A stretch of 64,000 nt of DNA from NCBI GenBank assembly GCA_964252035.1, contig OZ176206.1, one strand, 5' to 3'. The DNA comes from Podarcis erhardii. Taxonomy: Eukaryota. Positions within the stretch are counted from its first letter, which is position 1. Each line of letters opens with the position of its first letter. A model generated the notes under the pieces. The model searched no databases. It was not told the DNA's origin and saw only the letters and a program-made list of their open reading frames with translations. Positions 29,961 to 53,834 of this stretch are shown here, one piece after another. The position numbers were made by a program, and so were the translations under genes.

Positions 29961-29963
<3 letters not shown>

Positions 29964-31230: not shown

Positions 31231-31419
31231 ATGTAAGCAAAAGGTGGGTCCCTGCAACCTAATTTACACAGGCAGCAAAATGAGGTGCTCAAAGGAACTA
31301 CACCACTTCAGACTGCTGGTACATATGGAGTATACGTCACATTTTGACAGCTCACCTACATTTTTTTTTTAAGCCACCTCTCTGCAAGCTGAAAACTAGC
31401 ACAGGAGAAGGTAAACTAA

Positions 31420-34413: not shown

Positions 34414-34661
34414 TCTTGGAAGAATATCAGGAATATAGAGAAAACTCCAGGTCCTAGGGTAAAAAACATCACCCTGTCTGCCTACTCTTGTAAAGGGTTG
34501 GCATGGAAGGCTCATCAAAATCATGTCAAAAAACAATTTGTTGAACTCCTTCAGTGATACTCCCTCAATTGCCTTAGTCCACAGTGGTGTGGTAGGGAAA
34601 CTGTGAATATAAACATCATTAGCCACGGTGTTCACATCAACAATGAGAGGTGTGCAGGTAA
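34414..34661 (-). pseudogene. TRDMT1: Processed pseudogene fragment of tRNA C38 methyltransferase TRDMT1/DNMT2 (approx. residues 25-108)
   Basis: Translation DVNTVANDVYIHSFPTTPLWTKAIEGVSLKEFNKLFFDMILMSLPCQPFTRVGRQGDVFYPRTWSFLYIPDILPR matches vertebrate TRDMT1 DVNTVANEVYKYNFPHTQLLAKTIEGITLEEFDRLSFDMILMSPPCQPFTRIGRQGDMTDSRTNSFLHILDILPR. No introns at the remembered junctions (after IE, within FTR). There is a frameshift upstream (LPAH then shift), and motif I and the C-terminus are absent. Confidence 0.92.
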
Positions 34662-35224
34662 GTATATACCTGCAAATTTCACAATTAAAAAATCAAAAGG
34701 AAATAACCTGTGAGGAAACAAGCAATTAGCACACACACAGGAAACAGGACCTCACTACTTTAGGGGCACTACATCACGAAAACCAGAATCCACAAGGATG
34801 AAACTTCTAACTATAGAAACAATAGTAATAAAAACCTCAGTGTTTCTTTGCCAGTCCGTACTGCCAGACTGACACTATAATTACATGTTAAGTGAAAAAC
34901 AATCACCTCAAATCAGTTCTGACAAAACAAGAGAGGACAACACAGAAACAACTAGAATGGCAAGAGGTTGGCAATGATGTTGCCCAGATTCTCCATAAAA
35001 ATTCAGGAAAGAAATGGAAGGAAGGCAAGTTCAGACTAAATGACTCTACCATTTATCAAAAAAGCAGTGAAGTGGTATATATGCTAATATGGTGAATGGA
35101 ATATTGCACCATTATTCTAAAGTGTTCATTCTAATTTATAAAACTTCTGCATGGGAAAGAAGCTAATAAGAAGCCATTTCAGAATCTTTGCTAACCTTGA
35201 AACACTGATTCAAACTGATACAAA

Positions 35225-35470
35225 ATTTTGAGATATTCATGGAGGTAAAGGATCTCAATGGCTACTAGACATGGTGGAAGCTATGTTCTGCCTCCACAGT
35301 TGGAAGCTGTAGTGCTTCTGAATATCAGCTGCTGGAAACCACAGGAGGGGAAGTGTTGCGGATCCTGGTTGCGGGTTTCCCATAGGGATCTGGTTGGCAC
35401 TGTGAGAACTAAATGCTAGACTAGATGGGCCATAGGCCTGATCCACCAGGGCTCTACTTATGTTCTTATG
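35225..35470 (+). mobile_element. CR1 LINE 3' end
   Basis: ttcatggaggtaaaggatctcaatggctactag...gactagatgggccataggcctgatccaccagggctctacttatgttcttatg. Confidence 0.88.
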
Positions 35471-35745
35471 GAACATGACTGGCAGAACACAAAACCACAA
35501 AAAAGAGCCAAAGTTCACCTGAGGTCAGCTACTTCCTAGGGCCATCCAAAAGATCAACCTATGCAACCCAGATCACAATATGGCACCAGCGGAAAATTAA
35601 GTGCACTGCAGAAAACTCTATTTGCAAAGAAACCAGCTCCCAATTAGAACAGGTGATAAGCAACATAATTTGTGTGGGCAAAGAAGCTCTCAAATCATCC
35701 ACAATAGCTAACTTAGTGCAGAATTACTTCTCAACCCCCAAGATA

Positions 35746-36039
35746 CAGTGGCGCCTCGCAAGACAAAATTAATCCGTTCCACGAGTCTCTTCGTCTTGCA
35801 GCTTTTTCGTCTTGCGAAGCACGGCTATTAGCGGCTTAGCAGATTAGCGCTATTAGCGGTTTAGCGGCTTAGAAAAAAGGGGGGAAAGGGAAAAAACTCG
35901 CAAGAACTCGCAAGACGTTTCATCTTGCGAAGCAAGCCCATAGGGAAATTCGTCTTGCGAAGCACCTCAAAAGACAGAAAACTCTTTCGTCTAGCGAGTT
36001 TTTCGTCTTGCGAGGCATTCGTCTTGCGGGGCACCACTG
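35746..36039. mobile_element. Tc1/mariner (Tigger-type) MITE, 294 bp, with repeated TCGTCTTGCG motifs
   Basis: TIR cagtggcgcctcgcaagac / gtcttgcggggcaccactg; TA TSD; CpG-rich. Confidence 0.93.
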
Positions 36040-39000
36040 TATTAATGAGCCAAGCACTGAGCATGAGCAAAATGTCAAGCTCATCCTCTAAACCAAACTT
36101 TGCCAACCTGGCTCCTAATAGATGGACAACACCCATGAGCTCTTGCTGGCATGTGCTGGGTGGGACTGATGGGAGTTGTAGTCCAAAACATTTGGAAGGA
36201 ACCAGGTTAGCCAAGGCTGCTGAAAACCAATTACACTGAATGCAATTCCATACAGAATGCTTTTTTGTGTACACCATCCAGGCAAGAACAAGCTTTTAAT
36301 GCTATCACATTGCCACTCAATTCTTATTACATGCTGCCCATACAAAGGTGTGCCGCACACAGGTGTCCACCAGTCCAGGATTCGTCTGTCTTTTAAAAGG
36401 CCACTAAACCCAGCCAAGCCTGACACCCACCCCTCCAGGCACCAGCTAAAGAACAGCAAAGCCCCGGCTGCTCTGCAGGAACATAAAGAACACCCAGCTG
36501 CAGCAAACCTGCCACTGTTATCCCCAGATGCTCTCCCCCCACCCCACCCCAATGGCTTCCTAGGCGCTTCATGACCTTCATGGCTGCCCTTCCCCAGCTG
36601 TTCCACATCAACATATTTGCTCCTGCAGCCGCTCAGGCCTGCAAGCTGCTATCAATCACATCCGAGAGCAGAGATGCCTTTAAATGCCACACCAGGTCTC
36701 TGCTGTGGAGGTTCACATGGACTGTCACTCACCTTGTCCCTCGGCATCAGGCCTGGAAAAGAACAGATGCACACATCTTCACTTTGCCTGCCTCTCCCCC
36801 AGGCACACCGTCAACTTTACAACTACCTGATCTTGTGAATTAACTGCAGCAAATGCAAAGGATGACGATGACGCATTCTAGGTTCCAAATACTGATGCCT
36901 CTGACCTTATCTATGGTTGATCACACTAGCAGCATCTTTGGAGGAGGGGGGAAAGAGAGAAAGAGAAAGAAGGAAGCTGCATAGAGAGAAGGGAAGGTAA
37001 ATAAAAACATAAAAGGAAAAAAAACCTTTTGAATGTAGTCTGCTGTTGTAGGTTGGGATTACAGATATTTTCTGGGTCTGGCAACTGGGCTTTATCTCAA
37101 GCAAGGTACTCTATAACTTAAACAGTCATATACTGTACTGCATTATGACCATTTGAAGGGGTGCTCTTGCACTAAAGTGCAACAAAAGCAGGACAACATA
37201 AACTGGAATGTTTGTTACAGGACTTCAGCAGGAAGCAAAGGGACATGCACTGATTGGAAATGAAGCTGTTATGTTGCAGGTGCTAACCATGTTGAAAGCA
37301 GGATTGCATATAACCACCCCAATACTATCATGAGTACAAATCGTCATGAATACCCAATAAAAAAGACATCTGGAGAGGTGCCCTAGGCCTAGGAATGATA
37401 ATGGAGATAGAATCTCCTTCCTTGCTAACTGTTCCCACCCCAAACAGGGGCTCCTGCCCCCCTAAAAATTTGATGGCACTGCCTGGGAATCTAAAATATG
37501 AATTCAGCCTTGCAAAAACATGATACTGGCATGGATTTGCTTGAAATATGTTTCCAGTACTGATGTGTTCTCTCTTTCACTTACCATTTCCCTTGACACA
37601 GAGGTTGCTGGGGAGCACCCTGTCTAAATGGGCAACCCCATTTCTTTGCTGGGAAAATTATGCAAAAGGAACTTTTGTGCTAAGGATGGCCCATTGTACT
37701 AGGAAAGGAGATTAATCTTTACAAAAAGCAGGCTTTGACTCAGGATTTGTTGAGGCGTACTGGCCTTTTAAAAGAAAAGAAAATTTCTATCAAGCAATTG
37801 CCCTACTTTTACTCCCAACCCGAACCCTTGAGGTGTGCTTGGAATTTTTAAGTGTTAACAAAGCACAGACAAAAAAAATTTAAAAAGGGGCAAACTTGCA
37901 AAAGAAGTGGGAGACTTATTGGTCTTCATGCATCAGTCAATACAGCATTATCCAGTCTTTTGCCCTCTTCCAGACAGAAAGAGGACTTGGGAGCAACCTT
38001 TTTAGAGGCACTGTCTGGTTTGTGTGGAACCAAAAGGCCTTTTTACATGATTACAAGAGACAAGAACCATCAAAAGAACATCAGCCAAAAGAGGAGAATA
38101 GACTTGCCCAATTAGCCGAAAATGTACTCCAAAAGAGCCCCGTCTGTCTCCTAAATAAAAACTAGCATCTCCAACAATCCAGCTAGTAAATACAAAGAAA
38201 AAATAGCTTTATATAGAAACTGTCCTGGGGTTTCTGGATATGAGTTGGGGGCTGGAAAAACTGGCAGGGGCTTCACTGGTTTCCCAACTCTATTGTTACA
38301 CAGCACCTTGCCTCTGCTTGGCCCTTCTATGATGTTTCCCACTATCCCCCATGCCCTTCATCTTTCACACACTTCCTTGCATGAAAGGTACTTGGGAGAG
38401 TTGCAAGTTCAGAACTGTGAGTCAGCCGACAGAGCCAAAGTGGAAGTTTTTCCATGTGCCTTTCTTGAAGCAGATGCTCTCCTCATTGCCAAAACAAGCA
38501 GGAACTGCTGTTCGGCAGCACTACAGCATGCCAAAGAGAAGAGGAGGGTGGAGAAATTACAGTGCTGTGACACATGACAACCCATTTCCCACCCACCCAC
38601 ATTTCACATACACACCCCAAGGGCCAAGAAATGATGCCTGCATTTGATAAGTGGAAAACGTTGGGGACAGAAGACCACCTGAAGTCCTGAACAAACACTC
38701 TGGTGGCAAAGTGCCACTGCTTTGCTTAAGTGACATGCTGAGCTCTTATTTCTCTCCCCACCCTCCCTTCCTCCCCACAATCCCTTCCTTCTTGATAACA
38801 AATGCTACAGGGAAACAGATGTGAGTGTCTCCTGCTGACATTCATGCGATGACAGATGTACTCTGCAATACTTCATGTGTGGGTAAAAGACTCCAGCAGC
38901 ACCTGTTCCCTTTCCTGGTAGAAATATGTATGTTCTGCAAATAAGCCCTCCATGAACTCGTGACATTAGCCAGAGCAAGAAAGGAAAGCCCAGTTTAAGA

Positions 39001-41407
39001 AAAACAGCAAGTGAAAAGGCAGCAGGAAAAGGAACCCAAACATCTTAACTGCTTCAGGGGCATCAGGAGATACAGAAAATTCCTGAATGAAGAGGACCAG
39101 GGAGTGACTTTCACCACTGGGTCAATTACAGAACACAAAAGCAGCTCACTCCATTCTACAACAGACTTGCAAGTAAACTCCCAGTCAAGAAACTCTTTTT
39201 TCATAGCCCAAATTAGCCCAAATTAAGCTTCTTGATTTCCTATGTTGATTAAAACTTGCTACAAGCCAGTAGAAAGATAGCTTTTTACATGCCTGTACCA
39301 TAGTACTGTTACAAGTTTGAGTGGAGCAAGGTTCCCCTAAAAGCTCTGAATTCAGTAAAGGAGTTAGAATTTAAGAAACCTCATAATTTCTAGCTTTAGT
39401 AAGTGTTGGAGTTCAATCAATCGGTTTAGCAGTACAAAAATACAGAATGGACTTGTTTTCCTGACTAAGGAATCGCCTGGGGATGGGCCATTATGAAACA
39501 AACGCTGAGCCATTAACCCATCAAGAAAGCCATCAGCAAGGCAGGACTCTCTGCCGGACACAGAGTTGGGAGACTCCACCTTGAGCTCTGGGTAATTAGC
39601 AAAAGACAATCCCAGAATTGGGAGGGGGAAGTTCCCAGAATTGCTGTGAGTAATGAGGTAAGCAAAAAGGAAAAAGTGTCTATTCTACAAGCTGGAGGTC
39701 AGACATGATGTATGGAGTCCCGTGGAATCTGAGGCTGCAGCAATAATGGGAACAGGACCCTCTTGGAATGCAGTCTCTCCATCTGGACACTGGTTGCAAA
39801 TATGTGAAAATAAACCATACAGCATAAAGACACCACAGATTCTGCTGTCTCATTGTCCCCAAAGGAAACACTCTGGTAAGTGCACCAGCAACCCCTGGAA
39901 TCTCACACCACTCATGGAGATTGGGGTGGGGTGTAACAGTCTTGAATTCAAGGGCATGATTTGAACATAACGCTAAGCTGAAGCCAAGAATAAACCATGA
40001 TTTAACCATGAGTTGCCCCACAGATGACCAAACAAATCATGACCTATGCCATAGGAATATACAAAGCAGCCTTACACAGAGTCAAAACATTCTAGCTCAG
40101 TATTGCCTACACTGCTTGGCAGCAACTGTCTGGAATTTTTCCCAATCCTACTTGAAGATGGCCAAGGGACTTTAGGAACTGATGTTTTCTATGGACTCCA
40201 ACAATGTATGGTGCTCCCCCTCAATACGATGAGGATTATTTAATATCTGTCTAATTAAATGTACAGCCCCAATTCTGGCATTTGAAGCCACCAGCATTTT
40301 AAACATTTATTCTCATCAAGCTATAAATTTTTAAAGGATCACAAAACTTCCAAAGGCAGCACTCTAAAGAAAGTACAACTTGAAGCAGAACCTCTTAAGG
40401 TGCATTAAATTATGATTTATTTAGCCCAACACTTACAAGCCCTGTTTCCCATGTGATAGAGGAATCACTTTGTAACAGAGCATATATAAAAACTTAAGTG
40501 TGATGTTTTGCTCTACACAGTCCTTGAGGACGACTGAAAAGTGACTGCAGGAAAAAATAGATGCACCTGGATGCGGGAGGATGGTTCTGTGTGCCCAACT
40601 ACAGGAGCCCCAAACGGAAGAGACAGCACTGTCATCAAACTGCAGCAGAACAGGGACGGAATAGAGAGCCGTCACCAGCTCTGCTGCAAAGCCAGGATCC
40701 TCCCTCCATCAACTGTAATATGGCAGCAGCCATTTCACCAGGCTATAACAGAGGAGAGAAGAAAAGGATTGAAACACCACTCCATCAACATGGCTGAGAG
40801 ATCAGTAGGTTTTGGCTCCTCCTTTTCTTGACCTTCTCCACCCCAGCTGGGTATTTTAAGAATTTGTAACAAAGAACTGGTACCTGAGTTGGTCTATTTT
40901 TCCTCCCTCCCAATTCATTTTCCTTCTGTGTTGTGTTCTTTTTATATTGTAAACTTCACATCTGGAACTGTTTTATTTTTAGTAATCTGCAAACTGCTCT
41001 GATAGGCTTTGGGGACTGAAGAGTGGGATAAAAATTCATTAATTAAATAAGAGGGAAACTGATAAAGCCCATAGAATGTTGCTTCCTTTTCTGATGTTTT
41101 TTTAACACAATTAAAGTAAGGATGGAAATTCAGCAGCACGTTTTCTTTCCCCAGCATGGAGATGAAATGATAAGTTTGCCTGCTGGATTCCTGACTGTCA
41201 GAGGAAATTTGACAAAAGGCTGGAAAAATGTTGGCAATGTTAAAGAAAGATTTTGAAAGCTTGGTTTGTTTTCCAGCTGATCTTGCAATTTGCTTTTGTG
41301 GCTTAATTAGCTTTCATTAAGGAATCATGCTGGATTCACACTTAATACGATATCAAAGTTAAAACAAACCAAGGTTCACAATCCAACAACAAACCATGGT
41401 TTCAGAA

Positions 41408-41625
41408 TAAAAATAAAAATAAATAAAAAATTGTTCAGTAGCACCTTAATATAGACCAACTAAGTTTGTTCTGGTAAAAGCTTTTGTGTGCATGCACACT
41501 TCTTCAGATACACGAAAGCTTATACCAGAACAAACTTGGTTGGTCTATAAGGTGCTACTGGACAATTTATTTATTTTTATTTTGACTGCATCAGACCAAC
41601 ACGGCTACCTACCTGAATCTAGAAT
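41408..41625. mobile_element. Penelope-like element remnant with inverted pseudo-LTR (fold-back)
   Basis: Arms aaattgttcagtagcacctta.atagaccaactaagtttgttctggta.aagctt / aagcttataccagaacaaacttggttggtctataaggtgctactggacaattt; end cagaccaacacggctacctacctg; 13-bp flanking duplication CATGGTTTCAGAA (41395-41407, 41626-41638). Confidence 0.75.
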
Positions 41626-41954
41626 CATGGTTTCAGAACACAGGTTGTTGGCAGTAAACAAACTATAGTTAAGCTGCTATACAGGATTCAGACCATCAAA
41701 CAAGCCATGGTTTTCCGGCGACAGAAAATTCATTCTGAATCAGAGTTCTAACATGGGTCAGAACTCAACATCGAACCTACCAAGTCGCGATAGCAACAGC
41801 GAAGAGGACCTTCTTTGCCACCTCTATTGCATCTGCAGAAAACAGTAGCAGCGGAATCTTTTAGGTAGTTCGTAATTTAACAGAGCCACCTTCACAATTG
41901 GGGCCTGGTGAGGACACCAAGATCTCCTGCAATAATTTTGCATTTTTTTTAAAT

Positions 41955-43700
41955 TTTTTATTTTTTGCAAATAAAGTTGTTCAGATTTAGAAAGAGGTAG
42001 ACTCCACCATAAGAGCAGGACTGGGGCAGGAGAGTGCTAGAGTCCTGTCTAGTCAAGTTGCATGGGATCAGTTCCAATCTGTTACCTCTGAGGATGTGTT
42101 CAAGCTGCTTGGACAAGTGAAACTGACCACCTGTCTCCTTGATCCTTGCCCATTCTGGCTCATAAAAGTGAGCCAGGCTGGGCTGGGTGATGAGCTCCAC
42201 AGGCTGATAAATGCTTCCCTCTGTGAGGGAGTCTTCCCAGACCCGCTTAAAGAAGCGGTTATTAAACCACTTTTTAAAAAAATCATCTTTGGACCTGGCC
42301 ACTATGGCCAACTATTGCCCAGTCAAATCTTCCATTCTTGGGCAAGGTGTTTGAGCATGTGGTCACTGAACAGCTCCAGGCATGCCTGGAGGATACGGAC
42401 CATTTGGATCCCTTCCAATTGGGATTCAGGCCTCATCATGAAACTGCCCTGGTCGTGCTGGTCAATGATCTCTGGCAGGCTAGGGACAGAGGTGAAAGCT
42501 GTTTCCTAGTTCTGCTGGATCTCTCAGCAGCTTTTGATACCACTGACTATGGTATCATTATGGACCGTCTAGGGGAGATGGGAGCTGGAGGCACTGTTAC
42601 TCAGTGGTTCTGCCCCTTCCTCCTAGGCCATGTCCAGAAAGTGGTGTTGGGGAATGAGTGTTCAGACCCCTGGGCTCTCACTTGTGGGGTGCCTCAAGGC
42701 TCTGTCCTCTCCCCCATGCTTTTCAACATCTGTATGAAGCTGCTGGGAGAGAGTATCTGAGGGTTTGAGCTGGGTGTTCACCAGTATGAAGATGATACCC
42801 AGTTCTACCTCTTGTTTAAATCAGAACTAGTGAAGGCAGTGAATGTCCTGTGTGAGTGTCTAGAGGCGGTTTGATGGCGCCTAATGGATTGAGGTTGAAT
42901 CCTGACAAGACAGAAGTACTGTTTTGGGGGGACAGGGGGTGGGTGGGGGGACTCCCTGGTCCTGAATGGGTTAAGTGTACCCCTGAAGGACCAGGTGTGC
43001 AGCCTGGGAGTTATTTTGAACTCACAGCTGTCCATGGAGGTGCATATCAATTCTGCGTCTAGGGCAGCTGTCTACCAGCTCCATCTGGTATGCCAGCTGA
43101 GACCCTACCTGCCTGCAGACTGTCTCACTGGGGTGGTACATGCTCTTGCTATCTCCCGCTTGGACTACAGCAATGTGCTCTACGTGGGGTTGGCTACCTT
43201 TGAAGGTGACTTGAAACTACAACTAATACAGAATAAGGCAACTGGGAGCAGCTGCCGGGACCATGTAACACCGGTCCTAAAGGATCTTCACTGGCTCCCA
43301 GTACATTTCTGAGCACAATTCAAAGTGTTGGTGCTGACTTTTAAAGCTCTAAACAGTCTTGGTCCAGTACATCTGGAGTGTCTCCATTGCTCAGCCCAGA
43401 CACTGAGGTTCTCCTGCAAGGGTCTTCTGGCAGTACCCTCACCATGAGAAGTGAAGTTACAGGGAACCAGACAGAGGGCCTTCTCAGCAGTGGCACCCTC
43501 CCTGTGCAATGCCCTCCCATCAGATGCCAAGGAGATGAAGAACTACACAACTTATAGAAGATATCTGAAAGCAGCCCGGTATCAGGAAGTTTGTAATGTT
43601 TGACGTTTTACTATGTTTTTATATGTGCTGTAAGCTACCCAGAGTGGCTGGGGAAACCCAGCCAGATGGGCGGGGTATGAGTAATAATATTAATAATAAT
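41955..43700 (+). mobile_element. 5'-truncated L2 LINE (~1.7 kb), frameshifted RT ORF2 and (TAA)n tail
   Basis: TTCLLDPCP.WLIK, EGVFPDPLKEAVIKPL, DPFQLGFRPHHETALV.LVNDL, LVLLDLSAAFDT.D, CGVPQGSVLSPMLFNI, YEDDTQ, LHWLP motifs across ORFs 42096-43312. Confidence 0.96.
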
Positions 43701-44320
43701 TAAAAAACAAACAAACCCCAAGCCAGTGTTTCTCAAACTAAGCAGGCCAATCCCATTTGCAGACTGAGGGTGAGAATCAGCTACTTGCCCAAAGCCAGGT
43801 GGCAAGCACATGTAACTCAAATTTAAGTTTATGAAGCAACACTGATTCAAATGTAAAAACAAAAAACATGTAAGGGTTGTATCCAATGTTAGTTTTACTC
43901 AGAGTAAACCCAGTCAAATGAATAGGAATGACTAACTTGGTTTATACATTTCAGTGATTCAACTCTAAGTAGAACTTAGCTGATACTACCCTTAGTTTTT
44001 GTCTTACCCAGGGTATGGATTAGGTGCCTATCCCATATAAAGGAGCTGCAAAACTCACTTAAGTAAAGTGCAGGACAATGTATTGGGCATATCTACATTG
44101 TTTTAATCAGTTTCTCATAGTTTCTCCCAAAGAATCTGAGATGAGAATTGTAATTAGGTGAAGACACTGAGAATTTGCCCCCTGCACAATAATAGAGTCC
44201 CTAAAATTCAGGAGTGGGGTTTCCAAAGTGGGGAATGCATTCAATCAGTTTAAGCCTGCAGCGCAGATTTGCCCAGGACTTTCTGTAGCTTCACTTTCAG
44301 TTTCTCTACACTAATGGTAA

Positions 44321-44508
44321 CACAGGAAGCTACCCTATACCAAATCAGGCCATTGGCCCATCTTGTTCAGTATTGCCTACACAGATTGGCAGCAGCTCTC
44401 CAGGATTTCAGATTGGTGACATTCCCAGCCCTACCTGGAGGTATCAAGAGATTTAACCTGGCACCATTTACATGCAAAACAGATGCTCTGCCACTGAGCT
44501 ATAGCCCC
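44321..44508 (-). mobile_element. Squam3-like SINE
   Basis: Reverse complement head ggggctatagctcagtggcagagcatctgttttgcatg; same body as 3728. Confidence 0.85.
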
Positions 44509-45149
44509 ATTGTGCATTTTGCTGCAGTTATAAGAGGGGCTGTTTCCAGAGGATTCCTATGCAGCACAAATCAATCACATTTGTTTCTCTGTCTCAGCCT
44601 CCTCAAGGCAGGCAGTGTGTGCTGATCCTGTGACTCCTTCAGCAGCTGCCCCAGCAAATTGAAAGAGAAATGCTAGAAGCTTGCCAAGCATAAAGGAACA
44701 GCAAAGTACATTCCTAGGCCACACCAGATAGAAGAGAACTCTTAGTATAAAGCACCTATTGCAAGCAAGACGACTACTGTGAGCAGAACATAGGAAGCTC
44801 CCTTTCCCCAGGTCAGATTTTCTGCCCAACTGACCCAGTGTTACCTGCTCTGACTGACAGTGACTCTCCAGGATCTCAGGCTGAGGAAAGTCACTCTACT
44901 CACCTGTTATTTGCCCTTTTTACTGGCAACTGACTCTAGTACCTTTGGCATGCAGCATATTGTGGTCCCTCCCCAAGAAGTCCTACCTCTAGGATGGAGA
45001 ACCAACAGGTGTTTGTTGACTCCACTCCCAGCAACACCAGCTGGCATGGCCATCGGTTGGGGATTACTAGAGTTGTAGTATGACAATGTCTGGTGACACA
45101 CGCATTCCCTATCTGGGCTGTATACAACATGGGACTCATGTATCTTCAA

Positions 45150-45650
45150 GCAGGCGTAAGAAAACGTTTTGGCCCAGTGGAGCAGAGCTTTATCTCCTCC
45201 AACCCCCACAGGCCAACTTTGACAAGTGGCCACCCCCCTGTTAGTCATCTGATGTCATGATAACTCTTTGCAGGGGTCATGATTACTCTCTACAGAGAAC
45301 AAACTGGAGAAACAGCACCAAGCAAGACTGAACTCTCCACTCATCAGCAAGGGAACTGACATTTGCAGCCAAACTGAGCAGGGTTTAACCCCCCCCCCAC
45401 GTTCATCAGCTGATAAGTAGGGGTTAAACCCTGCTGCTTTGGCTGTGCATGCCAGCTCCCTGTGGGAAACTGACAGGTGCAGCTAACAGAGAACTGAACC
45501 CCACCAACCCTAGCCCATCAGCTGACATCACTCACACATCAAAGTTGTGTCAGCTGATTGGCACATGGGCAGGGTTTCAGGGTAAATGAACTTAAGGGCC
45601 AAATTAGACCCCCTGGTGACTGTCTCACCTCATAGCAGTTCCCATGCTGG
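45150..45650. mobile_element. Degenerate hAT-like element with internal hairpin
   Basis: gcagccaaactgagcagggtttaaccc...ggggttaaaccctgctgctttggctg (~45365-45445); termini degenerate. Confidence 0.5.
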
Positions 45651-47079
45651 CTCTGCTTGTTTACCCAGTTATGTAAGGCTAACAAGCATTTTAATAGGTA
45701 ATTTTCATATATGTGCATGAGTGCACATGTGTGTGAGAGAGAGTGTATGTTGTATGTATATTTGGATTTTTTTAGGTCAACTTGTTTTAACTTCTGACTT
45801 TTATTGAACATTTGAATGCATACTTAAGATTCTGTGTAAATAGTTTTGGCAATTAAGTGACATACAAATTTTACAAATAAAATTATCTACCCCTGCTCCT
45901 CGTACTCTGAAAAGCGAGAACTGTCACAACCAGGATTAGAGTCTTCACATCCATTGCTTCAAGGCTTCTAAGCAAACTTCCCCACAAGATATATATGGAT
46001 TTCCTCACCCTGCCCAATGTAATCTCTTAAGCACTGAGGAGGGTGTTGCAAGGCACAGGTTCTCCATTTGGCTCTTTGTTTTGCTGGCTAGTTTGTCAGT
46101 TTCCCTGTTGGATAGCAGCTTTACTTTCATATTTTAATTGCACTGTATGAGGAAGTACTTTATGTCCTTTGGAGCAGAAATAGTAAGACACAGTAGTCTC
46201 TCCAAAACACCATCTCCTTTGGGGGAGCCTGACCCACAACCAACCCCAGCTGGTCAGTCTTTGAAATAAAATCCAGTAAGGTGCTCAGTCAAAGCAACCC
46301 TAGCAATGGCAAAACAAGAAACATATCAATAGTTTAGATAAAAAGCTCTTTTTGCCTGAACACCACTAAGCATTCGAACACTTACAAAACACACCAGCTA
46401 GATACAGAGTACAGATACATTCCCATTTCACAGATATCTGTACTGTATTGAGTTTGCAGCAATGATGCATCTGACAGCAACTGTTTGAGCCAGAGCCCTG
46501 GCATGGAACATTCCAATTACTTGGGGAACAAAGCAACAAAAGGTTCACAGTCCAACTTCTGGGATAGAAGAGATAGCTGTCTGTTTGACTGGGATTAAAG
46601 CCCCATGAAGTACTTAGGGAAGGAGGAGCTGCGTGGGGGCTGGGTCAGGCCTAGATGGCTGACCGGGAGGAGGTCCTAGAAGCAGAGATGACTGGTGATC
46701 ACAAGGACTGGTGAAGCAGAATGCAAGGGAGATCAGAAGTTAGCCAAACCAGAGCCCAGGACAGCCAAAGGCAACTAATTCCAGTTTTGTCCCCAACCTC
46801 CTCCCTGCTGACTTCTGCAAGGGCAGCATTGGGACTAAAGAAGAGTAAGCCAATGCCACCCCCTGGACTGGATGCAAGTAAGAGGCAGGCGGGTGGGGGC
46901 TGGCTGAGCACAGGCTGAGGTTGGTGGGCAGCAGCCTCTGCTGCCTAAGGGGCAGAGAAACTAAGAGACAGAGGGCTCACTTGGGAAGATAAAAGGGAAC
47001 AAGAAACACATTACGAACCACTGAGAGAAACAGAGGGATTTACACAGAAGTTTTAGGAACAATGGGATTAGGGAACCAA

Positions 47080-47485
47080 AGGTATGCATGGTGCGGAGAA
47101 AGTGGTTAGATGAAAGTTGTCTCCTTCCCTCATAACACTAGAACTCATGGACATCCAATGAAACTGAATGTTGGAAAATTTAGGACAGACAAAAGAAAGC
47201 ACTTCTTCACTCAGGGCATAGTTAAACTCTGGGATTTGATTTCCCCAAGGTGTAGTGTATGGCTTTAAAAGAGGATTGGACAAATATATGGAGCAGAAGG
47301 TTATCAGTGGCTACTAGTCTTAATGGTTATGTTCCTATCCCCACTATTGGAGGCAGTATGCCTCTGAATGGCATTTGCTGAGAATCACAAATGTGGAGAG
47401 GGCTGCAGCACACTCAGGGCCTGCTTTTGGGTTTCCCATGGGCATCTGGTTGGCCACTGTGAGAAGAAGATGCTGGACCCAAGGT
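47080..47485 (+). mobile_element. CR1 LINE 3' fragment
   Basis: MHGAEKV...HNTRTHGHPMKLNVGKFRTDKRKHFFTQGIVKLW and the CR1 3' UTR. Confidence 0.9.
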
Positions 47486-47716
47486 ACCACTGTACTGAAC
47501 TTCACATATACTGATTTGAAGCAACCACAGGCTTTGCTTAAGTCTGGAGCTGCAAAGTTCCCCAGAGCTGATTTGAACAACCATGCTAAAAACCAATGCT
47601 TGTTCAAAAGAGGACTGCTAGCCCCACCGGCTCAAGGCAAAATGATTTTCAGACAAACAAAAGAATCTGAATACAAATGTCTCAAAGCAGCCTATCTCCT
47701 CCCAGTACTGAATGTA

Positions 47717-47958
47717 CAGTGGTACCTCAGGTTAAGTACTTAATTTGTTCCGGAGGTCCGTACTTAACCTGAAACTGTTCTTAATCTGAAGCACCACTTT
47801 AGCTAATGAGGCCTCCTGCTGCCGCCGTGCCGCCAGAGCACGATTTCTGTTCTCATCCTGAAGCAAAGTTCTTAACCTGAAGCACTATTTCTGGGTTAGT
47901 GGAGTCTGTAACCTGAAGCGTATGTAACCTGAAGCATATGTAACCCAAGGTACCACTG
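47717..47958. mobile_element. Tigger-type MITE, 242 bp; opposite-orientation copy of 22280-22513
   Basis: TIR cagtggtacct / aggtaccactg; TA TSD. Confidence 0.95.
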
Positions 47959-49344
47959 TACTACAGCAGCCTCTGTACAGTGGAGCTGACTCAAATGGTG
48001 AGCCCAGGGTTAGGAAGGCAGCTCAAATATTAGATCACATTTTATTACAGTCCTGCAATGTCATTCGTTAAGGCCTGTCCTGAGTTTATTATCAGCAGCT
48101 GTCCTCTCTAGCCAAGGGGATGGAAGCTCAGATGAGAAGCAAACAGCCCTCTGGAAGGCTTCTTAAGTCATAGGAGCATGAAAATCTCTCCCCTCCACTT
48201 ACACAGCTGACTTTCAGATTAAAAAGACACATTCCCACAGGGAGGGAAAGAAGCCAGTCAGCTTGGAAACACCTCCTTCAAGGATCCTGGGGCTTCCGTT
48301 TTTTCCATTTGCTGGCAGAATGGGAGTTCCTATCTTAGGGAGCATGCTTATTTGGGCTCTTTCAAAAGCTTGGCTCTGAGGCCAAGAAATATGTCACCAT
48401 TGATAGTCCAATCCTTTAAGGTTCCACAAGCAAGCACTAAATAGCATTGAGGCCACTTCATCATCTGCCTGCATGACTTGGAAATCAACACTCTACAAGT
48501 GGTTTAAGCTGAACAACTGTGATTGTTGCTAAAGCAATGCTGATGCCATATTTCAGAAATCTGATTACAGAAACACTCTTGAAATCAGCTTCACCCATTA
48601 TCAAGTTTCCTCCCCCCCCCTCATAAATTCTGCTTTCACTTTCTTTAGTTTAGGATTAACATGTTAGTGCAAACTATCTCTCCCATACACAATGGGAGGT
48701 GTGATTTATCCATGTGTTCTCTTCCCTGTCCCCCTTGCAATGTGCAAAACCACAGAAATGACAGAGGCTATTCCTGCAGGAAGTCATTGCCACATGCTGG
48801 TCTACTTGTATGCAATGGGGAGAGGTTGCATCATAGAGATGACCACACACTCATGAGGATTTTGAATGCCAAGAGATAAGACTATGCATGAAGGGAATAC
48901 TGTACCTCCAATCAGAAAAGAAAATTTCTATGGTGTTTTTAAGACAAGGAAGGAAACTCGCTATTGCATAGAAATCACAGGTCTTTGCCACTCTGGAACA
49001 TACGGAGCAACTACTACCTAAGAGCGCATCAAAATTTCTTTTTCTCTCTCTCATATTCAATGAGAAGTGCATTTGCACATCAACCCTGGTCTTCTGCATA
49101 CTCCTGTATGAAGGCAAGTTTCTCTTTTTGGCTTTAAAAGGACTGCAAATTGCTCACCCCACAAACAAAACCCTACCGCATAATTTGCCACATTTTCAAC
49201 AATATGCAACTGATATGGCAGACATTTAGCAAGCGAAGCCTTTCCTGGCATGCAGACAAAACAGAAAAACTTCATTTGTTGGATCTGTGCATGTTAGGCT
49301 GGTGTTAAAGAGGCACAGGGGCAGGCCAATAAGAATAAGAATGG

Positions 49345-49670
49345 TCTCTTCCCACAGCCCCAGACCTGTGATTATCATCCGAGGTCCTTAGTGTGCCTCC
49401 TCCACAAGAGGTCAGGAGGGTGGCAACATGAGAATGGGCCTTTTCTGTGGTGGCTCCCTGCTTGTGGAATGCTCTCCCTTGGGAGGGTTGCCTGGAACCT
49501 TTGTTGCATATCTTTAGGCACCAGGCAAAAACATTCCTCTTTTCTCAGGCCTTTATCTAATTAAACAATCTATGATCTATTATTGTTTTTGTTACTATGT
49601 CATGCATTTTCTTGTTTTTATATGGTAAACCACCCTGTGATCCTTGGATTAAGGATGGTATAGAAATATA
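49345..49670 (+). mobile_element. L2 LINE 3' end
   Basis: gggccttttctgtggtggctccc..cttgtggaatgctctccc...tttaggcaccaggcaaaaac...ggatggtatagaaat. Confidence 0.82.
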
Positions 49671-50743
49671 TCTACTGGCATTCCTGGTTGCTCACAGGTT
49701 TATTTGGAAGCCTGACTCCCATTACTTTCCCACCTTCCACACTGAACTGACTGGCAGGGATTAGACCCCCCCCCTTACCCATAATGCTTTGGAATCTGCT
49801 GCTAGACGAGCATCGGGACATCTGCACACTGTGGAGCTGAACTGCACACCTGGAAGACTAAGCAACTAGAGAAATGTAAATAGCTAGTATATAAAATAAA
49901 AAGCACTAAAAGCACTATAATCAGCTTTCTAACAGCCACTCAGCCACCTGAGGACCTGCCTTCAGGCTATTAGGCAAGTATGATTTACAAATGTTTTCTT
50001 GTTAAGCCACAAATTCCTAGTGTTAGTGACAAACTGGACAAGAACATTTAAATGTTGAGCAAAACAGCCATGGAGGAGAGGGGACGGCTTTTAGCTCACA
50101 TTTGGTGGACTACTAACTTCTGTAGATTCACTCTTTTAAGGCACCTAAACCATAAGTGGGCATGGGAGTGCCCTCCAGAAAGTCCTGTGCACTACTAATT
50201 AGTTTACTGTGACATGGAACTCTGCATTGCGCTGCCACAGCCTACCATGGCTCTGCTTCTGGGATTCTTTCCAGCCGTTGTACCTGTATTCTGAAGATAC
50301 ATGAATTAGCGCGGGGGGGGGGGGAGACACACCTGATATGCCCATTAACAGAAAAACACCTCAGGAAAAAAGCACTTTGCATCATAGTTGGGAAACTGTG
50401 GAGTTCTCTTACGGCTCTAAAAAGCTAATCCCTAATAGGATTTTGTAGCAGGAGTAGAATGGCACCAGCATTAGAATTCTTGTTAGCTTCTGGTCTTGAG
50501 TGAGTCACCTAAGAGAAAGCCTTCCAGCAGCCAGTGCTTTAAAAAAGGAGAGACATGCTTACAGTTCTCCCATGCACCTTGACAGAGATCCATGGTAGGG
50601 TTTTTTAGAGTCATGAGGTCAATGACTCTGGAGCGGCTGGTTTGCTAGAAAGCAACAGTTTGGCACCTGTCTCCAGCCAAAGCTCGCAGAAGAGCAACAG
50701 CAGATAATTCCAGTTCCACTGGAAGGTCAACCAGGCAGCTTAC

Positions 50744-53083
50744 CTTTTGGAGAGAAGCTGGTGCCATTGCAGGTGCAGCAAAGAGATCTCTGGACACTGT
50801 GTTTTTGCCAGCCAGCACCAGTACGGAACACTCAGCGCATGCTCCGATGGTCAGCTGCTTACCGTCATCCACCAGCAAGCTGCTAGGCACCCGTAAAGAG
50901 CACAGGAACACTGGCAGCCTGGCAACTTGCACCGCTTTTAATCCAAGGCATCGTTTCTTCTCTTGCCTGCAGAAGAAGCAGACAAAAGTCTCCACTTTGT
51001 ACTGCCTGGACCAGGCACTGCTTGGATGGGGGGAATGGTTGCTTTCATGCTGCATCCACTGCCCCAAGAGATCATGGTAACAGAGCACACATGTGGCCAC
51101 TATTCCAGTTGAATCGACAGGCCTAGCCCGAGGAGCTGGTGGGTAAACTGTGAGGAATGGGAAGAATGGCTCCTTCTCACCAAAGCGGCCTGGAGGGTTA
51201 ACACTGATGTGAAACTCCTTCCCTGCTCCCAGTTCAGCTCCACAGATGTAGCAAATGGACACCAAGCCCACTTTGGCCAAACCAGGATGCCGGGCAATGC
51301 TGTTGGACTCCCCAGCTGAAAAGACCTGGTGATACCTGCCCAGGAAGCTCTGCACCGAAGTGATGAACTCCTCATTGTGGCAAGCCCGGTACATGGCCCA
51401 TAGGTCCTGCAGCACACCATAACATTTCCGACAGCTATGGACCTCCCAGTGCTTGTTGAGACCTTTGGCATTGGGAGGGCAAGGAAGGAGGCTGAGGAAG
51501 GGGAAGTGCATGGTTGTTTTGGCATTGCCGTTGGTGATCTTGGCAGAGACTGACCGGCCATCCTTGGTGCAATCCTCCCCACAGAGGTAACATGCTTCCT
51601 GGAGAAGCTGCAGGGGTCCAGGCAGTACCTCCTCTCTTGGAAGAGTCTCCCTCTTAGCCTTGGGGGCTACAGCGTTGAGAGGTACTACATAGAGCCGCTG
51701 CAGGACAGGCACGTTGGCCAACTCAAAGCTTTGCCACTGCTGCATGAGGGAAGCGAAGCAGCAAGAACACACTAAGGTGCTACCAGCGGTGCTGATGGGT
51801 AAAGCCCCCGGAGGAGGGCTGTGCAACCACAGGAAGGGGAAGAAAGGCGCCTTAGAGGCTTTCTCCTGCTTTTGCACGTGAATCCTGTGCTGGGAAGTAG
51901 ACGTCAAGAGGGAGCCGCAAACGTAGCAAACGACTTCTCCTACCGATGGCGGCTCTGCCCCCCAGAGAGGTCTGGGCGCTAGGAGGGCGCTGCCATTCTC
52001 TTTTTGCTCCTCGTCACTGGTGATATTGATCTCGCTCTCCTCGGAGGAGCAGTAACTGGAAAGCTCTCGGCCACTTTCCCCCGGGGGTCGCTTGCCCACC
52101 AACCCGTCGCCTCTTCCTGCTGTATTGAAGGCCCCCGGTGCGCTCCCGCCGCTGCCTCCTGGCGCGCCATGAGCAGCTCTCCAAATCGGCGCCTCGGCTC
52201 CCCAGAGTCTTGCCCGCCGCTGCCTCTTCCTCCGAGGCTTCTCTGCCGGTGGCAGCCCGTTCCCCGGGCGCAAGGGGGCCGCCGCCATCGCCGCCTCCTC
52301 TGGGGGTGGCGGCGGCGGCTGGTTCCACTCGCGGTAACTGGCGCGGCTCCCCATGTGCGCGCTTGGCACCGCGCGCTCTTTGACGCGCCAGTAACCCGGA
52401 CTGCCTTTGGCGCCGCTGTTCCGGCTGGGGGAACGCAGGTCAGGCTCCGAGAGGTTACCGGCGTCAGAGAGAGAGGAAAGCTCAGAGTCTTCGCCGCCGG
52501 CGCCGCAACCTTCTTCCTCGTCGTCGTCGGCCGGCTGGCTCCGGCCGCTGCTGCTACTAGGACGCCGCTCGTCGTCGGCGCCCAGCACGTAGGAGAGGTT
52601 CCACTCTTGGGGGGCCCTGCGCAGCCCGCCGGGCCCCCCCGCCGGCCCGTCGCACTGGTAGGGCCGCTTCAGCCAATACATGCGCTTTTCCACCGGCGTG
52701 CGCGTCCTCTCGAAGGAGTCCCACTGCTCCGCCAGAAAGCAGCGGCAGACGGCGCACACCACGGCGCAGCCCTCCGGAGTCACCTCCTGCGCTCCGGGCG
52801 CCGGCTCTTGGTGCTGCAGGAAAGGGAAAAAAGGCTGGTTGTCGCGGGGGTACTTCACTTGCAGCTTCAGCTCCTTGCCCCGGCTGATCCCGCCGCCGCA
52901 GATGAAGCAGCAGAACGCCGCGTCGGAGGAGGCGGAGGCAGCCGCCGCCAACGCCGCCGGGGACTCGGCACGACAGCAGCTGCCACTCGCCGCTGCTCCT
53001 GCACGCTCGTCCCCGGACGCGATCGCGGCCATCAAGCGCTGCTTGCGCGAGATCGGCGCCTCCTTCTCCGGATAATCGCTCAT
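50744..53083 (-). CDS. GSE1: Large first coding exon (780 codons) of a long GSE1 isoform; five Cys4 (CxxC...CxxC) Plexus-like modules plus a Ser/acidic/Pro/Gly-rich linker
   Basis: 812-codon ORF 50645..53083 starts in a CpG island with Kozak gcaaaATGa. A strong phase-0 donor CAA AAG|gtaagc follows codon 780 (53084-50744=2340 nt). Modules start at C59, C386, C498, C611 and C702. The coding call is very secure. The GSE1 name is from recall of a similar ~2.3-kb far-upstream GSE1 exon in human and of Plexus/GSE1 relatedness, and is not verified. Confidence 0.7.
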
Positions 53084-53750
53084 TTTGCCCTCGGGTAGTC
53101 CCCGCCCGGGCGGGAGCGGCGGCTGCGGGAGGCTCCCCAGGGCTGATCGCTCATCCTGCAGGCGCCGGGTGGCCGGACACGCTCTGGGAGGGAGACGGGC
53201 TGCCGGAGTTGGCTGCGATTAGTTGGTTCCCATCTGCAGACTTGCTGCTGCTGCTGCCGCCGCCGCCGCCGCCACTTTAGGAATGGGTGGGAAGGGACTG
53301 GGATCCGGGCTGCTGCTGGCGGAGGGGGGTTGTTTTTTGGCGTGGGGCGCTCCTGCGGGCAAAGGCTGGAGACGGTTGCCAGCCGCGTCCCGCTCCAGAG
53401 CTAACTTCGGCCGGGTGGAGGAGCAGCAGCCGCCTCTTGTGCAAAGTTTGGCTGCGAACTCGGCAGCGCCATCTCCCTCCCTCCCTGGAGGTGGGTCTCC
53501 TCCGCGCCACCAGCAGCGGCGGCTTCCACAATAAACCAGCCCCCTCGCCTGTCTCTCCCCCACCCCGCGCGCCAAAATCTGCATTGGGGGGAGGAGGGAG
53601 GGAGGGCTTCTTCTCCCTCCTTGCTCAGGCTCGCGGCCAACGATCACACAAGGAAAGCCCCGCTTCGGAGGAGCTTCGCGGCCGTCGCCTGCCCAGAGTC
53701 ACAAGACCTTTCTGAAGCCGAAAGAATATAAAGAGGTTCGTGCGGCTGTA
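51870..53750. promoter_or_regulatory. CpG island / promoter of the minus-strand gene
   Basis: Abrupt rise in GC and CpG relative to the CpG-depleted flanks; GC boxes (CCCGCCC at 53101); (GCT)4(GCC)6 at 53244-53273; covers the ATG and roughly the 5' half of the exon. Confidence 0.85.
53080..53154 (-). CDS. Candidate uORF MSDQPWGASRSRRSRPGGDYPRAK*, stop codon overlapping the main ATG
   Basis: Manual translation from ATG at 53154 (gcaggATGa) gives 24 codons then TGA at 53082-53080, sharing TG with the main ATG (53083-53081). It starts 71 nt upstream, so it is out of frame. Confidence 0.55.
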   Translation of the reverse strand: MSDQPWGASRSRRSRPGGDYPRAK

Positions 53751-53834
53751 GAAAGATTCTTGTTTGCATTTGGACCTGCAACATTCAAGTTCCAATTCTT
53801 ACTAAAGACTTGGAGTGGTTTGTTGGACTGTACA

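What the first reader, a model, noticed from the sequence alone, without database searches (positions are those of the whole stretch)
50744..53083. One 2.34-kb exon encodes five copies of an unnamed Cys4 module, probably a Plexus-like N-terminus of a long GSE1 isoform
Seen in sequence: five CxxC-x(43-50)-CxxC units (C59/62-C110/113, C386/389-C439/442, C498/501-C551/554, C611/614-C665/668, C702/705-C749/752). The first four share C(F/Y)xCG...(P/H)(F)FPFL...P.P.A...CxxC...Lxx(Q/L)W, and units 1, 2 and 4 end in a (R)x(Y) tail; unit 5 is degenerate. Established: canonical GSE1 is a CoREST/LSD1/HDAC1-2 complex subunit with no such modules, and Drosophila Plexus is a nuclear-matrix protein with Cys-rich motifs. 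Inference: this is a far-upstream first exon giving GSE1 an array of probable treble-clef-like Zn modules that could target the co-repressor (compare the MYM fingers of ZMYM2/3 in the same complex). To my knowledge this isoform and domain are essentially uncharacterised.
Basis: partly seen in the sequence, partly recalled or inferred. Interest (0 to 1): 0.78.

Follow-up and report, generated by a model that had tools for sequence, protein, structure and literature searches.

The report
Zinc-module first exon of long GSE1
This lizard exon is real and spliced: it encodes the N-terminus of a long form of the co-repressor subunit GSE1, with five zinc-finger-like modules shared with fly Plexus, an isoform that databases predict in other vertebrates but that no paper I found discusses.

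Summary
It is a 780-codon coding exon (53083..50744, minus strand) with ten CxxC pairs at the stated residues, ending at an AAG|GTAAGC donor.

**Identity.** The window is a Podarcis lizard; the best hit is P. muralis at 99% identity.
- The exon has orthologues in all jawed-vertebrate classes.
- RefSeq-type models join it to canonical GSE1 with its PF12540 domain. These models are 1.5-2.1 kaa long and come from frogs, turtles, birds, marsupials, placentals, coelacanth, sharks and teleosts.
- The same architecture occurs in amphioxus, annelid, mollusc, priapulid and arthropod proteins. Those include insect px/Plexus, which the lizard exon hits directly.

**Splicing.** Transcript contigs from two studies end exactly at the donor and leave the intron uncovered. 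The next ten codons resemble the linker exon of bird and turtle long GSE1.

**Modules.**
- All 20 motif cysteines are invariant in 37 vertebrates.
- In 91 diverse module copies, four Cys and one Gln are invariant.
- AlphaFold2 gives a confident fold (pLDDT 88): a zinc knuckle plus a helix with N-terminal ligands, the treble-clef arrangement.
- No Pfam family and no solved structure matches significantly. ZAD domains are the nearest weak structural neighbours.

**Verdict.** The isoform is already predicted in databases for other vertebrates, and the fly motifs were noted in 1999, but the domain is unnamed and unstudied. Interest is moderate.

The parts
50744..53083 (-). Coding part of the first exon of the long GSE1 isoform (780 codons, M1 to K780).
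   Evidence: ORF. Orthologues across vertebrates. Covered by transcript contigs in runs X1 and X5. 13 synonymous against 6 non-synonymous differences, plus one in-frame 3-nt insertion, relative to those contigs.
53084..53771 (-). 5' untranslated part of the same exon; the transcription start is roughly 53.5-53.77 kb.
   Evidence: Contig pieces run on without a joint to 53370 (X5) and 53529 (X1). Separate low-depth pieces reach 53750-53771. An in-frame stop lies at 53219-53221.
52000..53500 (.). CpG island over the 5'UTR and the 5' third of the coding exon.
   Evidence: GC is 0.68-0.71 and CpG observed/expected is 0.85-0.99, against 0.03-0.28 in the flanks.
50736..50746 (-). Splice donor, AAG|GTAAGC (exon ends at 50744, GT at 50743-50742).
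   Evidence: Sequence. Contigs of X1 and X5 stop fitting at 50743 and carry the same loose end. Depth is zero from 49668 to 50587, and the depth in the 50588-50771 bin is what cover from 50743 upward alone would give.
52667..52930 (-). Cys4 module 1 (aa 52-139; C59, C62, C110, C113).
   Evidence: HMM envelope. AlphaFold2 pLDDT 88.7. Cys invariant.
51959..52651 (-). Low-complexity, poorly conserved linker (aa 145-375): acidic/Ser, Pro-rich and a basic KPRRKRQRRAR cluster.
   Evidence: Translation. Identity to 36 vertebrates is mostly 0.1-0.2 here, against 0.7-0.8 in the modules.
51677..51943 (-). Cys4 module 2 (aa 381-469; C386, C389, C439, C442).
51356..51607 (-). Cys4 module 3 (aa 493-576; C498, C501, C551, C554), the most divergent of the four canonical copies.
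50987..51262 (-). Cys4 module 4 (aa 608-699; C611, C614, C665, C668).
50774..50986 (-). Derived module 5 (aa 700-770; C702, C705, C749, C752), abutting module 4.
   Evidence: Aligns with the last module of invertebrate proteins. Same strand/knuckle/helix order in the AlphaFold2 model, pLDDT 87.6 and pTM 0.81 for modules 4-5 together. Cys invariant wherever the vertebrate models cover the region.
1..50743 (-). At least 50.7 kb of the first intron; no further GSE1 exon lies in the window.
   Evidence: tblastn with long frog, shark and turtle GSE1 proteins finds only the first exon. The loose-end sequence is absent from the window.

Best explanation
**What it is.** This is the first exon (5'UTR plus 780 codons) of the long isoform of GSE1 in a Podarcis lizard. 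It starts in a CpG island and is spliced from the donor at 50744 across an intron of more than 50 kb.

**What it encodes.** It encodes an N-terminal arm of five roughly 85-residue Cys4 modules: four canonical copies and one derived fifth copy fused to the fourth. A disordered linker separates module 1 from modules 2-5. The arm is homologous to the cysteine-rich motifs of Drosophila Plexus.

**Ancestral architecture.** The bilaterian form of the gene is a roughly 2000-residue protein with 5-7 such modules followed by the DUF3736 region.

**Shown here.** The exon, its conservation, its transcription, the use of its donor, and its homology to GSE1 long forms and to px.

**Inferred from confident models and invariant ligands.** Each module binds one zinc through its two CxxC pairs. 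The first pair lies in a beta-hairpin knuckle and the second at the start of a helix, which is a treble-clef arrangement.

**Inferred and untested.**
- The arm gives the LSD1/CoREST/HDAC co-repressor complex an extra interaction surface. I think protein-protein contacts or self-association are more likely than sequence-specific DNA binding.
- The short 'canonical' GSE1 form lacks this surface. This follows from the long models, where the canonical N-terminus (MSHEPKSPS...) lies internal, downstream of the arm.
- Fly px mutants make ectopic veins, as do lsd1 and CoRest mutant cells, because Px is the fly GSE1.
For: **Exon and donor.** ORF and donor.

**Orthologues.**
- P. muralis hit at 99% identity, and orthologues in every jawed-vertebrate class.
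- The exhaustive search found 352 relatives, including 1.7-2.3 kaa proteins with 5-7 matched stretches.
- Those are named GSE1 or GSE1-like in frog, shark, amphioxus and scorpion.
- All five tested carry PF12540.
- About 45 long vertebrate GSE1 models carry PF12540.

**Plexus link.** The beetle relative P0189 retrieves proteins named px/Plexus, and P0238 is shared with the lizard's own hit list.

**Module counts.** Four detectable modules in vertebrates and mostly six in invertebrates.

**Conservation.**
- Invariant C, C, C, C and Q in 91 diverse copies.
- All 20 motif Cys invariant in 37 vertebrates, while most other Cys vary.
- Module 5 is the counterpart of the last invertebrate module.
- 13 synonymous to 6 non-synonymous changes and an in-frame indel.

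**Structure.** AlphaFold2 pLDDT is 88.7 and 87.6, with a knuckle-plus-helix topology.

**Transcription.**
- Contigs of two studies cover the exon, break at the donor and leave the intron uncovered.
- The continuation K|ASAFPLEAPA resembles K|ASPASLETPA of emu. That linker leads to the canonical GSE1 N-terminus (SMSHE(P/S)KSPSLGML) in emu, turtles, wallaby and coelacanth, and to GMSHEPKSPSLGML in pika and whale.

**Fly phenotype.**
- lsd1 and CoRest mutant intervein cells adopt vein fate: PMC7601384.
- px loss gives excess veins, and the px1 allele removes the cysteine-rich motifs: PMC13322080.
Against: - The lizard's own DUF3736 exons are outside the window. Only 30 nt past the donor could be read, so the full-length join rests on other species plus a 10-codon resemblance.
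- Runs X1 and X5 are 'RNA?' by guess. I take them as RNA because their cover is exon-only, because the contigs leave the genome at a canonical GT, and because an 86-Mb run could not hold 77% of this exon as genomic DNA.
- Two bulk RNA-seq runs, X23 and X24 (about 12% of each read), show no depth on the exon, so expression is low or tissue-restricted.
- Many gene models treat the exon as a separate 'uncharacterized LOC' or as a short isoform of 750-1000 aa. Short products may therefore coexist.
- Zinc binding is not measured. I could not inspect model coordinates for Cys geometry.
- No significant match to any solved fold (best Z 3.7-4.3), so the fold class rests on topology.
- The modules are only mildly basic (mean net charge +1.7), which does not settle the binding partner.
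- No paper I could search places Px in a CoREST complex.
Confidence: 0.8

Rival explanations
1. The exon belongs to an independent gene, or makes only a short stand-alone protein of about 800-1000 aa made of Cys modules. In that case it is not an N-terminus of full-length GSE1 in this lizard.
For: - The P. muralis RefSeq model LOC114602158 (P0001, 813 aa) is the read-through ORF.
- Many species have 'uncharacterized LOC' models of 700-1000 aa.
- Short models named GSE1 exist, for example a 1003-aa mammalian X21 model and a 1024-aa catfish model.
Against: - There is no transcript cover in the intron that the read-through model needs, and the contigs splice at the donor.
- The contigs go on for 2.7-3.5 kb beyond the donor, and the first codons match the GSE1 linker exon.
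- Fused long forms are found from sharks to mammals and in invertebrates.
Confidence: 0.08
2. The modules are divergent homologues of the ZAD (zf-AD) domain and act as ZAD does, as zinc-stabilised homodimerisation units that multimerise GSE1/Plexus.
For: - They share the Cys4 pattern and spacing (CxxC, 43-50 residues, CxxC) and the order of elements: knuckle, small head, long C-terminal helix.
- Grauzone ZAD is the top Foldseek hit, and two more ZADs fall in the top 13 of 350,542 chains.
- Five ZAD entries appear among the top 16 of 48,161 chains for modules 4-5, with Z 3.1-3.9 over 55-66 aligned residues.
- Two of 91 module copies touch PF07776 weakly.
Against: - All scores are in the noise range: Foldseek E 0.5, TM 0.36-0.42, Z below 4.
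- The lizard protein has no PF07776 hit at E up to 1.
- Across 91 queries, two hits at E of about 0.005 are near chance.
- The conserved FPFL, QW and RxY motifs are not, to my knowledge, ZAD signatures.
- ZADs occur once, ahead of C2H2 arrays. They do not occur as 5-7 tandem copies.
Confidence: 0.2
3. The modules are nucleic-acid-binding zinc fingers that tether the co-repressor directly to DNA or RNA.
For: - Weak structural neighbours include GATA fingers, endonuclease VII/HNH and ribosomal zinc proteins, which bind nucleic acids.
- Module 5 is basic, with net charge +7 and pI 9.4.
- Px is reported to be a nuclear-matrix protein (title of Matakatsu 1999, cited in PMC13322080).
Against: - Modules 1-4 are near neutral (net 0 to +2), and the family mean is +1.7.
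- The only conserved basic position is R134.
- The conserved residues are mostly hydrophobic or aromatic.
- The structural matches are not significant.
Confidence: 0.2
4. The ORF is a chance open frame or a decayed pseudo-exon.
For: None beyond the absence of reads in two bulk RNA runs.
Against: - It is an 812-codon ORF where the next longest elsewhere in the window is 303.
- It is conserved from sharks to lizards, and the ligands are invariant.
- Substitutions are biased toward synonymous changes.
- Spliced transcripts exist.
Confidence: 0.01

Closest known systems
Long predicted isoforms of vertebrate GSE1 (for example Dendrobates X1, 1811 aa; Pelodiscus X3, 2052 aa; Mustelus X1, 1971 aa).
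   Same: The N-terminal exon is orthologous, at 52-80% identity over the modules. It has the same five Cys4 units and the same position ahead of the linker that leads to the canonical GSE1 N-terminus and PF12540.
   Different: For this lizard only the first exon lies in the window. The closest public model, from P. muralis, is a separate read-through 'uncharacterized protein' rather than GSE1.
Drosophila Plexus (px), a nuclear-matrix protein with cysteine-rich motifs that represses wing-vein formation.
   Same: The Cys4 modules are homologous. The lizard exon hits a Drosophila px orthologue directly at E 1.9e-28 over 6 stretches. The overall size is about 1900-2000 aa, with modules at the N-terminus.
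   Different: - Flies have six detectable modules with longer spacers, and vertebrates have four plus one derived.
- PF12540 is on record for the beetle, bee, wasp and ant relatives among others, but for none of the listed fly or mosquito proteins.
- No paper I could search links Px to CoREST or GSE1.
ZAD (zf-AD, PF07776) treble-clef dimerisation domain.
   Same: It has four Cys in two CxxC pairs about 45-50 residues apart, a knuckle followed by a helix that starts at the second pair, and a similar size. It is the nearest solved fold in both aligners.
   Different: There is no significant sequence or structure score, the conserved motifs differ, these modules are tandem arrays rather than a single N-terminal copy, and no C2H2 fingers follow.
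MYM/FCS-type fingers of ZMYM2/3
   Same: They are zinc modules in proteins of the same co-repressor complex (established knowledge, not tested here).
   Different: Only 3 of 91 module copies touch an FCS-type model (PF04570 zf-FLZ), with a best E of 0.009, which is near chance. The lizard protein has no such hit. The ligand spacing differs.

Membership tests
GSE1 / Plexus family (long form) | An N-terminal array of Cys4 modules homologous to those of other family members. | tested here: met
   There are 352 relatives. Named GSE1, GSE1-like and px proteins are matched in 4-7 stretches.
GSE1 / Plexus family (long form) | A C-terminal DUF3736 (PF12540) region in the same protein. | not testable with these tools
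   The region lies outside the 64-kb window. It is present in all five long relatives tested and in about 45 vertebrate long models.
GSE1 / Plexus family (long form) | The exon is spliced to downstream GSE1 exons. | tested here: inconclusive
   The donor is used in two studies, and 10 codons beyond it resemble the GSE1 linker exon. The rest of the contigs could not be read.
Treble-clef zinc fingers (fold group) | The first ligand pair lies in a beta-hairpin knuckle and the second pair at the N-terminus of a helix. | tested here: met
   - Module 1 model: strand 8-11, then C12/C15; strand 59-62, then C63/C66 at helix 64-79.
- The same order holds in modules 4 and 5.
- This is topology only. Cys-Cys distances were not measured.
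ZAD (PF07776) | A match to the Pfam model at or above its threshold. | tested here: not met
   The lizard protein has no hit at E up to 1. Two of 91 copies hit, with a best E of 0.0053.
ZAD (PF07776) | Significant structural superposition on solved ZADs. | tested here: inconclusive
   ZADs rank highest but with Foldseek E 0.5 and TM about 0.4, and Z 2.5-3.9 at rmsd 3.1-3.9 over 50-66 residues.
ZAD (PF07776) | A single N-terminal copy ahead of C2H2 fingers, forming a homodimer. | tested here: not met
   Here there are five tandem copies and no C2H2 hit. Dimerisation cannot be tested with these tools.
MYM / FCS zinc fingers | A match to FCS/MYM-type models. | tested here: not met
   The lizard protein has no hit. 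Three of 91 copies touch PF04570, with a best E of 0.009.

The most novel reading that the evidence does not exclude
The Plexus/GSE1 module is an unnamed, bilaterian-wide zinc domain family, ZAD-like in shape. It forms the ancestral targeting or self-association arm of a core subunit of the LSD1/CoREST/HDAC complex. The GSE1 papers I opened do not mention this arm. Fly plexus vein phenotypes would then be CoREST-complex phenotypes.
Probability: 0.35. Interest if true: 0.7.

Novelty: new member of a known kind. Interest (0 to 1): 0.5.

Why it matters
GSE1 is a recurrent partner of LSD1, CoREST and HDAC1/2 with no known domain function, and it has been implicated in leukaemia and the DNA-damage response.

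The ancestral gene carries a conserved 780-residue arm of zinc modules. That arm sits upstream of the canonical N-terminus, so the short form lacks it. This gives a concrete, testable idea of how the subunit could recruit or organise the complex.

It also ties a classical fly wing-vein gene, plexus, to that complex. The module is confidently foldable, has no Pfam entry and no solved relative, so it is a clean target for structure determination.

For genome annotation, it shows that the 'uncharacterized LOC' models upstream of GSE1 in lizards, snakes, birds and mammals are most likely the first exon of GSE1.

Tried and rejected
- **Pfam on the whole ORF.** Only a sub-threshold Rad50 zinc-hook hit.
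- **PDB sequence searches.** Nothing with the single protein or with the 91-copy profile.
- **Pfam on each of 91 module copies.** A scatter of 64 families, none consistent.
- **Structure searches.** Foldseek and VIA-align on both models gave no hit with E at or below 0.001 or Z at or above 5.
- **Further exons in the window.** tblastn with long GSE1 proteins found no further exon. The 30-nt loose end is absent from the window.
- **Literature.** Searches for GSE1 with Plexus, CG4444, or CoREST with plexus found no paper that links them. The first search was polluted by GEO accessions and 'choroid plexus'.
- **Earlier notes of this scan.** None mention GSE1 or its neighbours.
- **Raw bulk RNA-seq runs X23 and X24.** No reads on the exon.
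- **Not done.**
  - I did not make a profile-profile comparison with a ZAD alignment, because no tool gave me ZAD sequences.
  - I left the one human hit (P0014) out of every alignment and script, and I fetched no human contig.
  - I did not touch the assembly gap at 13099-13298.
Full report
**1. The observation**

The minus strand carries one 812-codon ORF, 50645..53083. The next longest ORF outside this exon's own span is 303 codons.

CxxC occurs at residues 59, 110, 386, 439, 498, 551, 611, 665, 702 and 749, exactly as reported, with 43-50 residues between the pairs of a unit.

The similarity between units is beyond chance:
- Units 1, 2 and 4 are 34-37% identical to one another (E 1e-16 to 1e-19).
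- Unit 3 is weaker (E about 1e-7 to 1e-8 against units 2 and 4).
- Unit 5 shares only the cysteine pairs.

An in-frame stop at 53219-53221 precedes the ATG at 53083. The 5' third of the exon and its upstream 400 nt form a CpG island, with GC about 0.7 and CpG observed/expected 0.85-0.99.

**2. Whose gene it is**

The best database hit is Podarcis muralis LOC114602158 (813 aa, 99% identity). That model is simply the ORF read on into the intron, so the window is from a Podarcis lizard.

The exon has orthologues in squamates, turtles, birds, mammals, amphibians, coelacanth, sturgeon, gar, teleosts and sharks. Many of these are named 'genetic suppressor element 1'.

An exhaustive search without a length filter gave 352 relatives. 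They include 1.7-2.3 kaa proteins matched in 5-7 separate stretches.

Look-ups name these long proteins:
- GSE1 isoforms of a frog and a shark.
- GSE1 of amphioxus.
- Uncharacterised or GSE1-like proteins of a spider, a scorpion, an annelid, a millipede and a beetle.

All five that I scanned carry PF12540 (DUF3736), the GSE1 signature, far downstream of the modules.

A search restricted to long candidates listed about 45 vertebrate GSE1 models of 1.4-2.1 kaa with PF12540. They cover frogs, caecilians, turtles, ratites and passerines, a wallaby, pika, whale, rodents, coelacanth, sharks, rays and cyprinids.

Further look-ups add sea urchin, centipede, mite and bivalve. I saw no non-bilaterian member, but I did not search for one specifically.

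**3. The Plexus link**

The N-terminus of the beetle relative P0189 was itself hit by the lizard exon at E 1.4e-47. It retrieves insect proteins named 'px', 'Plexus' or 'MAP7 domain-containing protein plexus', including Drosophila species.

One of them, D. ficusphila P0238 (1940 aa), is also in the lizard exon's own hit list at E 1.9e-28 over 6 stretches.

[quoted passage not shown] 1999)' (PMC13322080).

**4. Is the donor used?**

Runs X1 and X5 come from two different studies and are labelled 'RNA?' by guess.

What they show:
- Contigs cover the exon from 53370-53529 down to 50743.
- The contigs then continue with the same unrelated sequence. The X1 contig is 4143 nt long with 3457 nt beyond the donor. 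The X5 contig is 5318 nt long with 2693 nt beyond.
- Depth is zero from 49668 to 50587. The small value in the 50588-50771 bin is exactly what cover from 50743 upward would give.

I take these runs as RNA for two reasons. Cover is exon-only and the contigs break at a canonical GT. An 86-Mb run also could not hold 77% of this exon as genomic DNA.

The 30 readable letters beyond the donor continue the frame as K|ASAFPLEAPA.

In long GSE1 models the residue after the corresponding K begins a short linker exon:
- ASPASLETPA in emu.
- ALSSSLETPA in softshell turtle.
- ASSSSLEIAT in wallaby.
- APFLPSEASS in a rattlesnake model.

That linker leads to ...SMSHE(P/S)KSPSLGML in emu, turtles, wallaby and coelacanth and to ...GMSHEPKSPSLGML in pika and whale, which is the canonical GSE1 N-terminus.

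The loose end is not in the window, and no other GSE1 exon is either. The first intron is therefore longer than 50.7 kb.

Two raw bulk RNA-seq runs, with about 12% of each read, had no reads on the exon. Expression is therefore low or tissue-restricted.

The contigs differ from the window at 19 coding positions, 13 synonymous and 6 not, and by one in-frame GGC insertion. This is the pattern of purifying selection.

**5. The module**

A profile built from units 1-4 finds four copies in vertebrate proteins and mostly six (range 5-7) in long invertebrate ones.

Conservation in 91 copies chosen to be less than 55% identical to each other:
- The four cysteines and Q120 are invariant.
- F86, P87, L117, W121, R134 and Y136 are at least 90% conserved.

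Across 37 vertebrates all 20 motif cysteines are invariant wherever the model covers them. Most other cysteines vary. Identity is 0.7-0.8 in the modules and 0.1-0.2 in the linker at residues 145-375.

The vertebrate unit 5 aligns with the last module of invertebrate proteins. That module still has FPFL and the R-x-Y tail and directly abuts the previous module. Unit 5 is therefore a derived but strongly conserved copy, not decay.

**6. The fold**

AlphaFold2 on module 1 with the 91-copy alignment gives pLDDT 88.7 and pTM 0.77:
- Three short strands, with C59 and C62 in the turn after the first strand.
- A short helix over the FPFL segment.
- A strand, then C110 and C113 at the start of a 16-residue helix.

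Modules 4-5 together give pLDDT 87.6 and pTM 0.81, and the same order of elements appears twice. A knuckle pair plus a pair at a helix N-terminus is the treble-clef arrangement (established classification). I could not read coordinates to check the Cys geometry.

No solved structure matches significantly:
- Foldseek's best hit is the Grauzone ZAD, at E 0.5 and TM 0.36-0.42. Two more ZADs fall in the top 13.
- The exhaustive aligner gives a best Z of 3.7 for module 1. Its hits are eL24-type ribosomal proteins, FYVE, endonuclease VII, HNH, GATA and ZADs at Z 2.5-3.0.
- The best Z for modules 4-5 is 4.3. Five ZAD entries lie in the top 16, at Z 3.1-3.9 over 55-66 residues.

These Z values are below the tool's stated noise level. 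ZAD is therefore the nearest known shape, not a demonstrated relative.

Neither Pfam nor PDB sequence profiles match.

**7. How it probably works**

Shown: this is a conserved, transcribed and spliced first exon of long GSE1/Plexus.

Inferred with good support: it contains five structural zinc sites, one per module.

Inferred with weak support: the arm is an interaction platform for the co-repressor complex.
- The modules are near neutral (family mean net charge +1.7). Only module 5 is clearly basic.
- The conserved positions are mostly aromatic or hydrophobic.
- The nearest fold is a dimerisation domain.

For these reasons I favour protein-protein contacts or self-association (about 0.4-0.5) over direct nucleic-acid binding (about 0.2).

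A suggestive concordance exists. Intervein cells mutant for lsd1 or CoRest adopt vein fate (PMC7601384, citing Curtis et al. 2011 and 2013). Loss of px also gives excess veins (PMC13322080). No paper I could search makes this connection.

The main GSE1-CoREST paper mentions no long isoform, zinc module or fly orthologue (PMC10681733).

**8. Novelty and verdict**

The exon is the lizard member of a predicted but unstudied isoform. The motifs were seen in fly Px in 1999, and databases already group px with GSE1 by name.

What is not in Pfam, the PDB or the literature I searched is the domain itself, its fold, and the implication for the CoREST complex. I rate it a new member of a known kind, with moderate interest (0.5).

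**Limits**
- The join to the DUF3736 exons in this lizard was not read.
- I left the single human hit out of all analyses and fetched no human contig.

Noticed in passing
window 53080-53154 (-): A 24-codon upstream ORF starts MSDQP, much like the main MSDYP start. Its TGA stop overlaps the main ATG, giving the overlap ATGA at 53083-53080. A second tiny uORF, ATGGGAACCAACTAA, lies further upstream. These may affect translation of the long isoform.
   Followed up: no
window 34192-34635 (-): This ORF has a weak C-5 cytosine DNA-methylase hit (PF00145, E 0.0034, below threshold).
   Followed up: partly
window 3842-3913 (-) and 44436-44508 (-): Two tRNA-like matches sit just above the Rfam gathering score (32 bits against 29). 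They lie inside the GSE1 first intron and are probably tRNA-derived SINE heads rather than genes.
   Followed up: no
window 49415-49667: Short repeat-like segments attract many RNA reads and contig ends, with loose ends on both sides. For example, only the 40 nt at 49627-49667 fit. This is probably a dispersed repeat that is transcribed elsewhere.
   Followed up: no
window 52307: The transcript contigs of organism A carry an in-frame GGC insertion here, in the Gly/Ala-rich linker, relative to the window. It is a length polymorphism or a species difference in the disordered region.
   Followed up: no
P0001 (P. muralis LOC114602158) against window 50645-50743: The public lizard model ends in 32 intron-encoded residues (read-through of the donor). 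The transcript contigs laid here do not support that tail.
   Followed up: yes
one search hit list (insect px orthologues): PF12540 is on record for the beetle, bee, wasp and ant px orthologues among others, but for none of the listed fly or mosquito ones. The C-terminal GSE1 domain may have diverged beyond recognition in Diptera.
   Followed up: no
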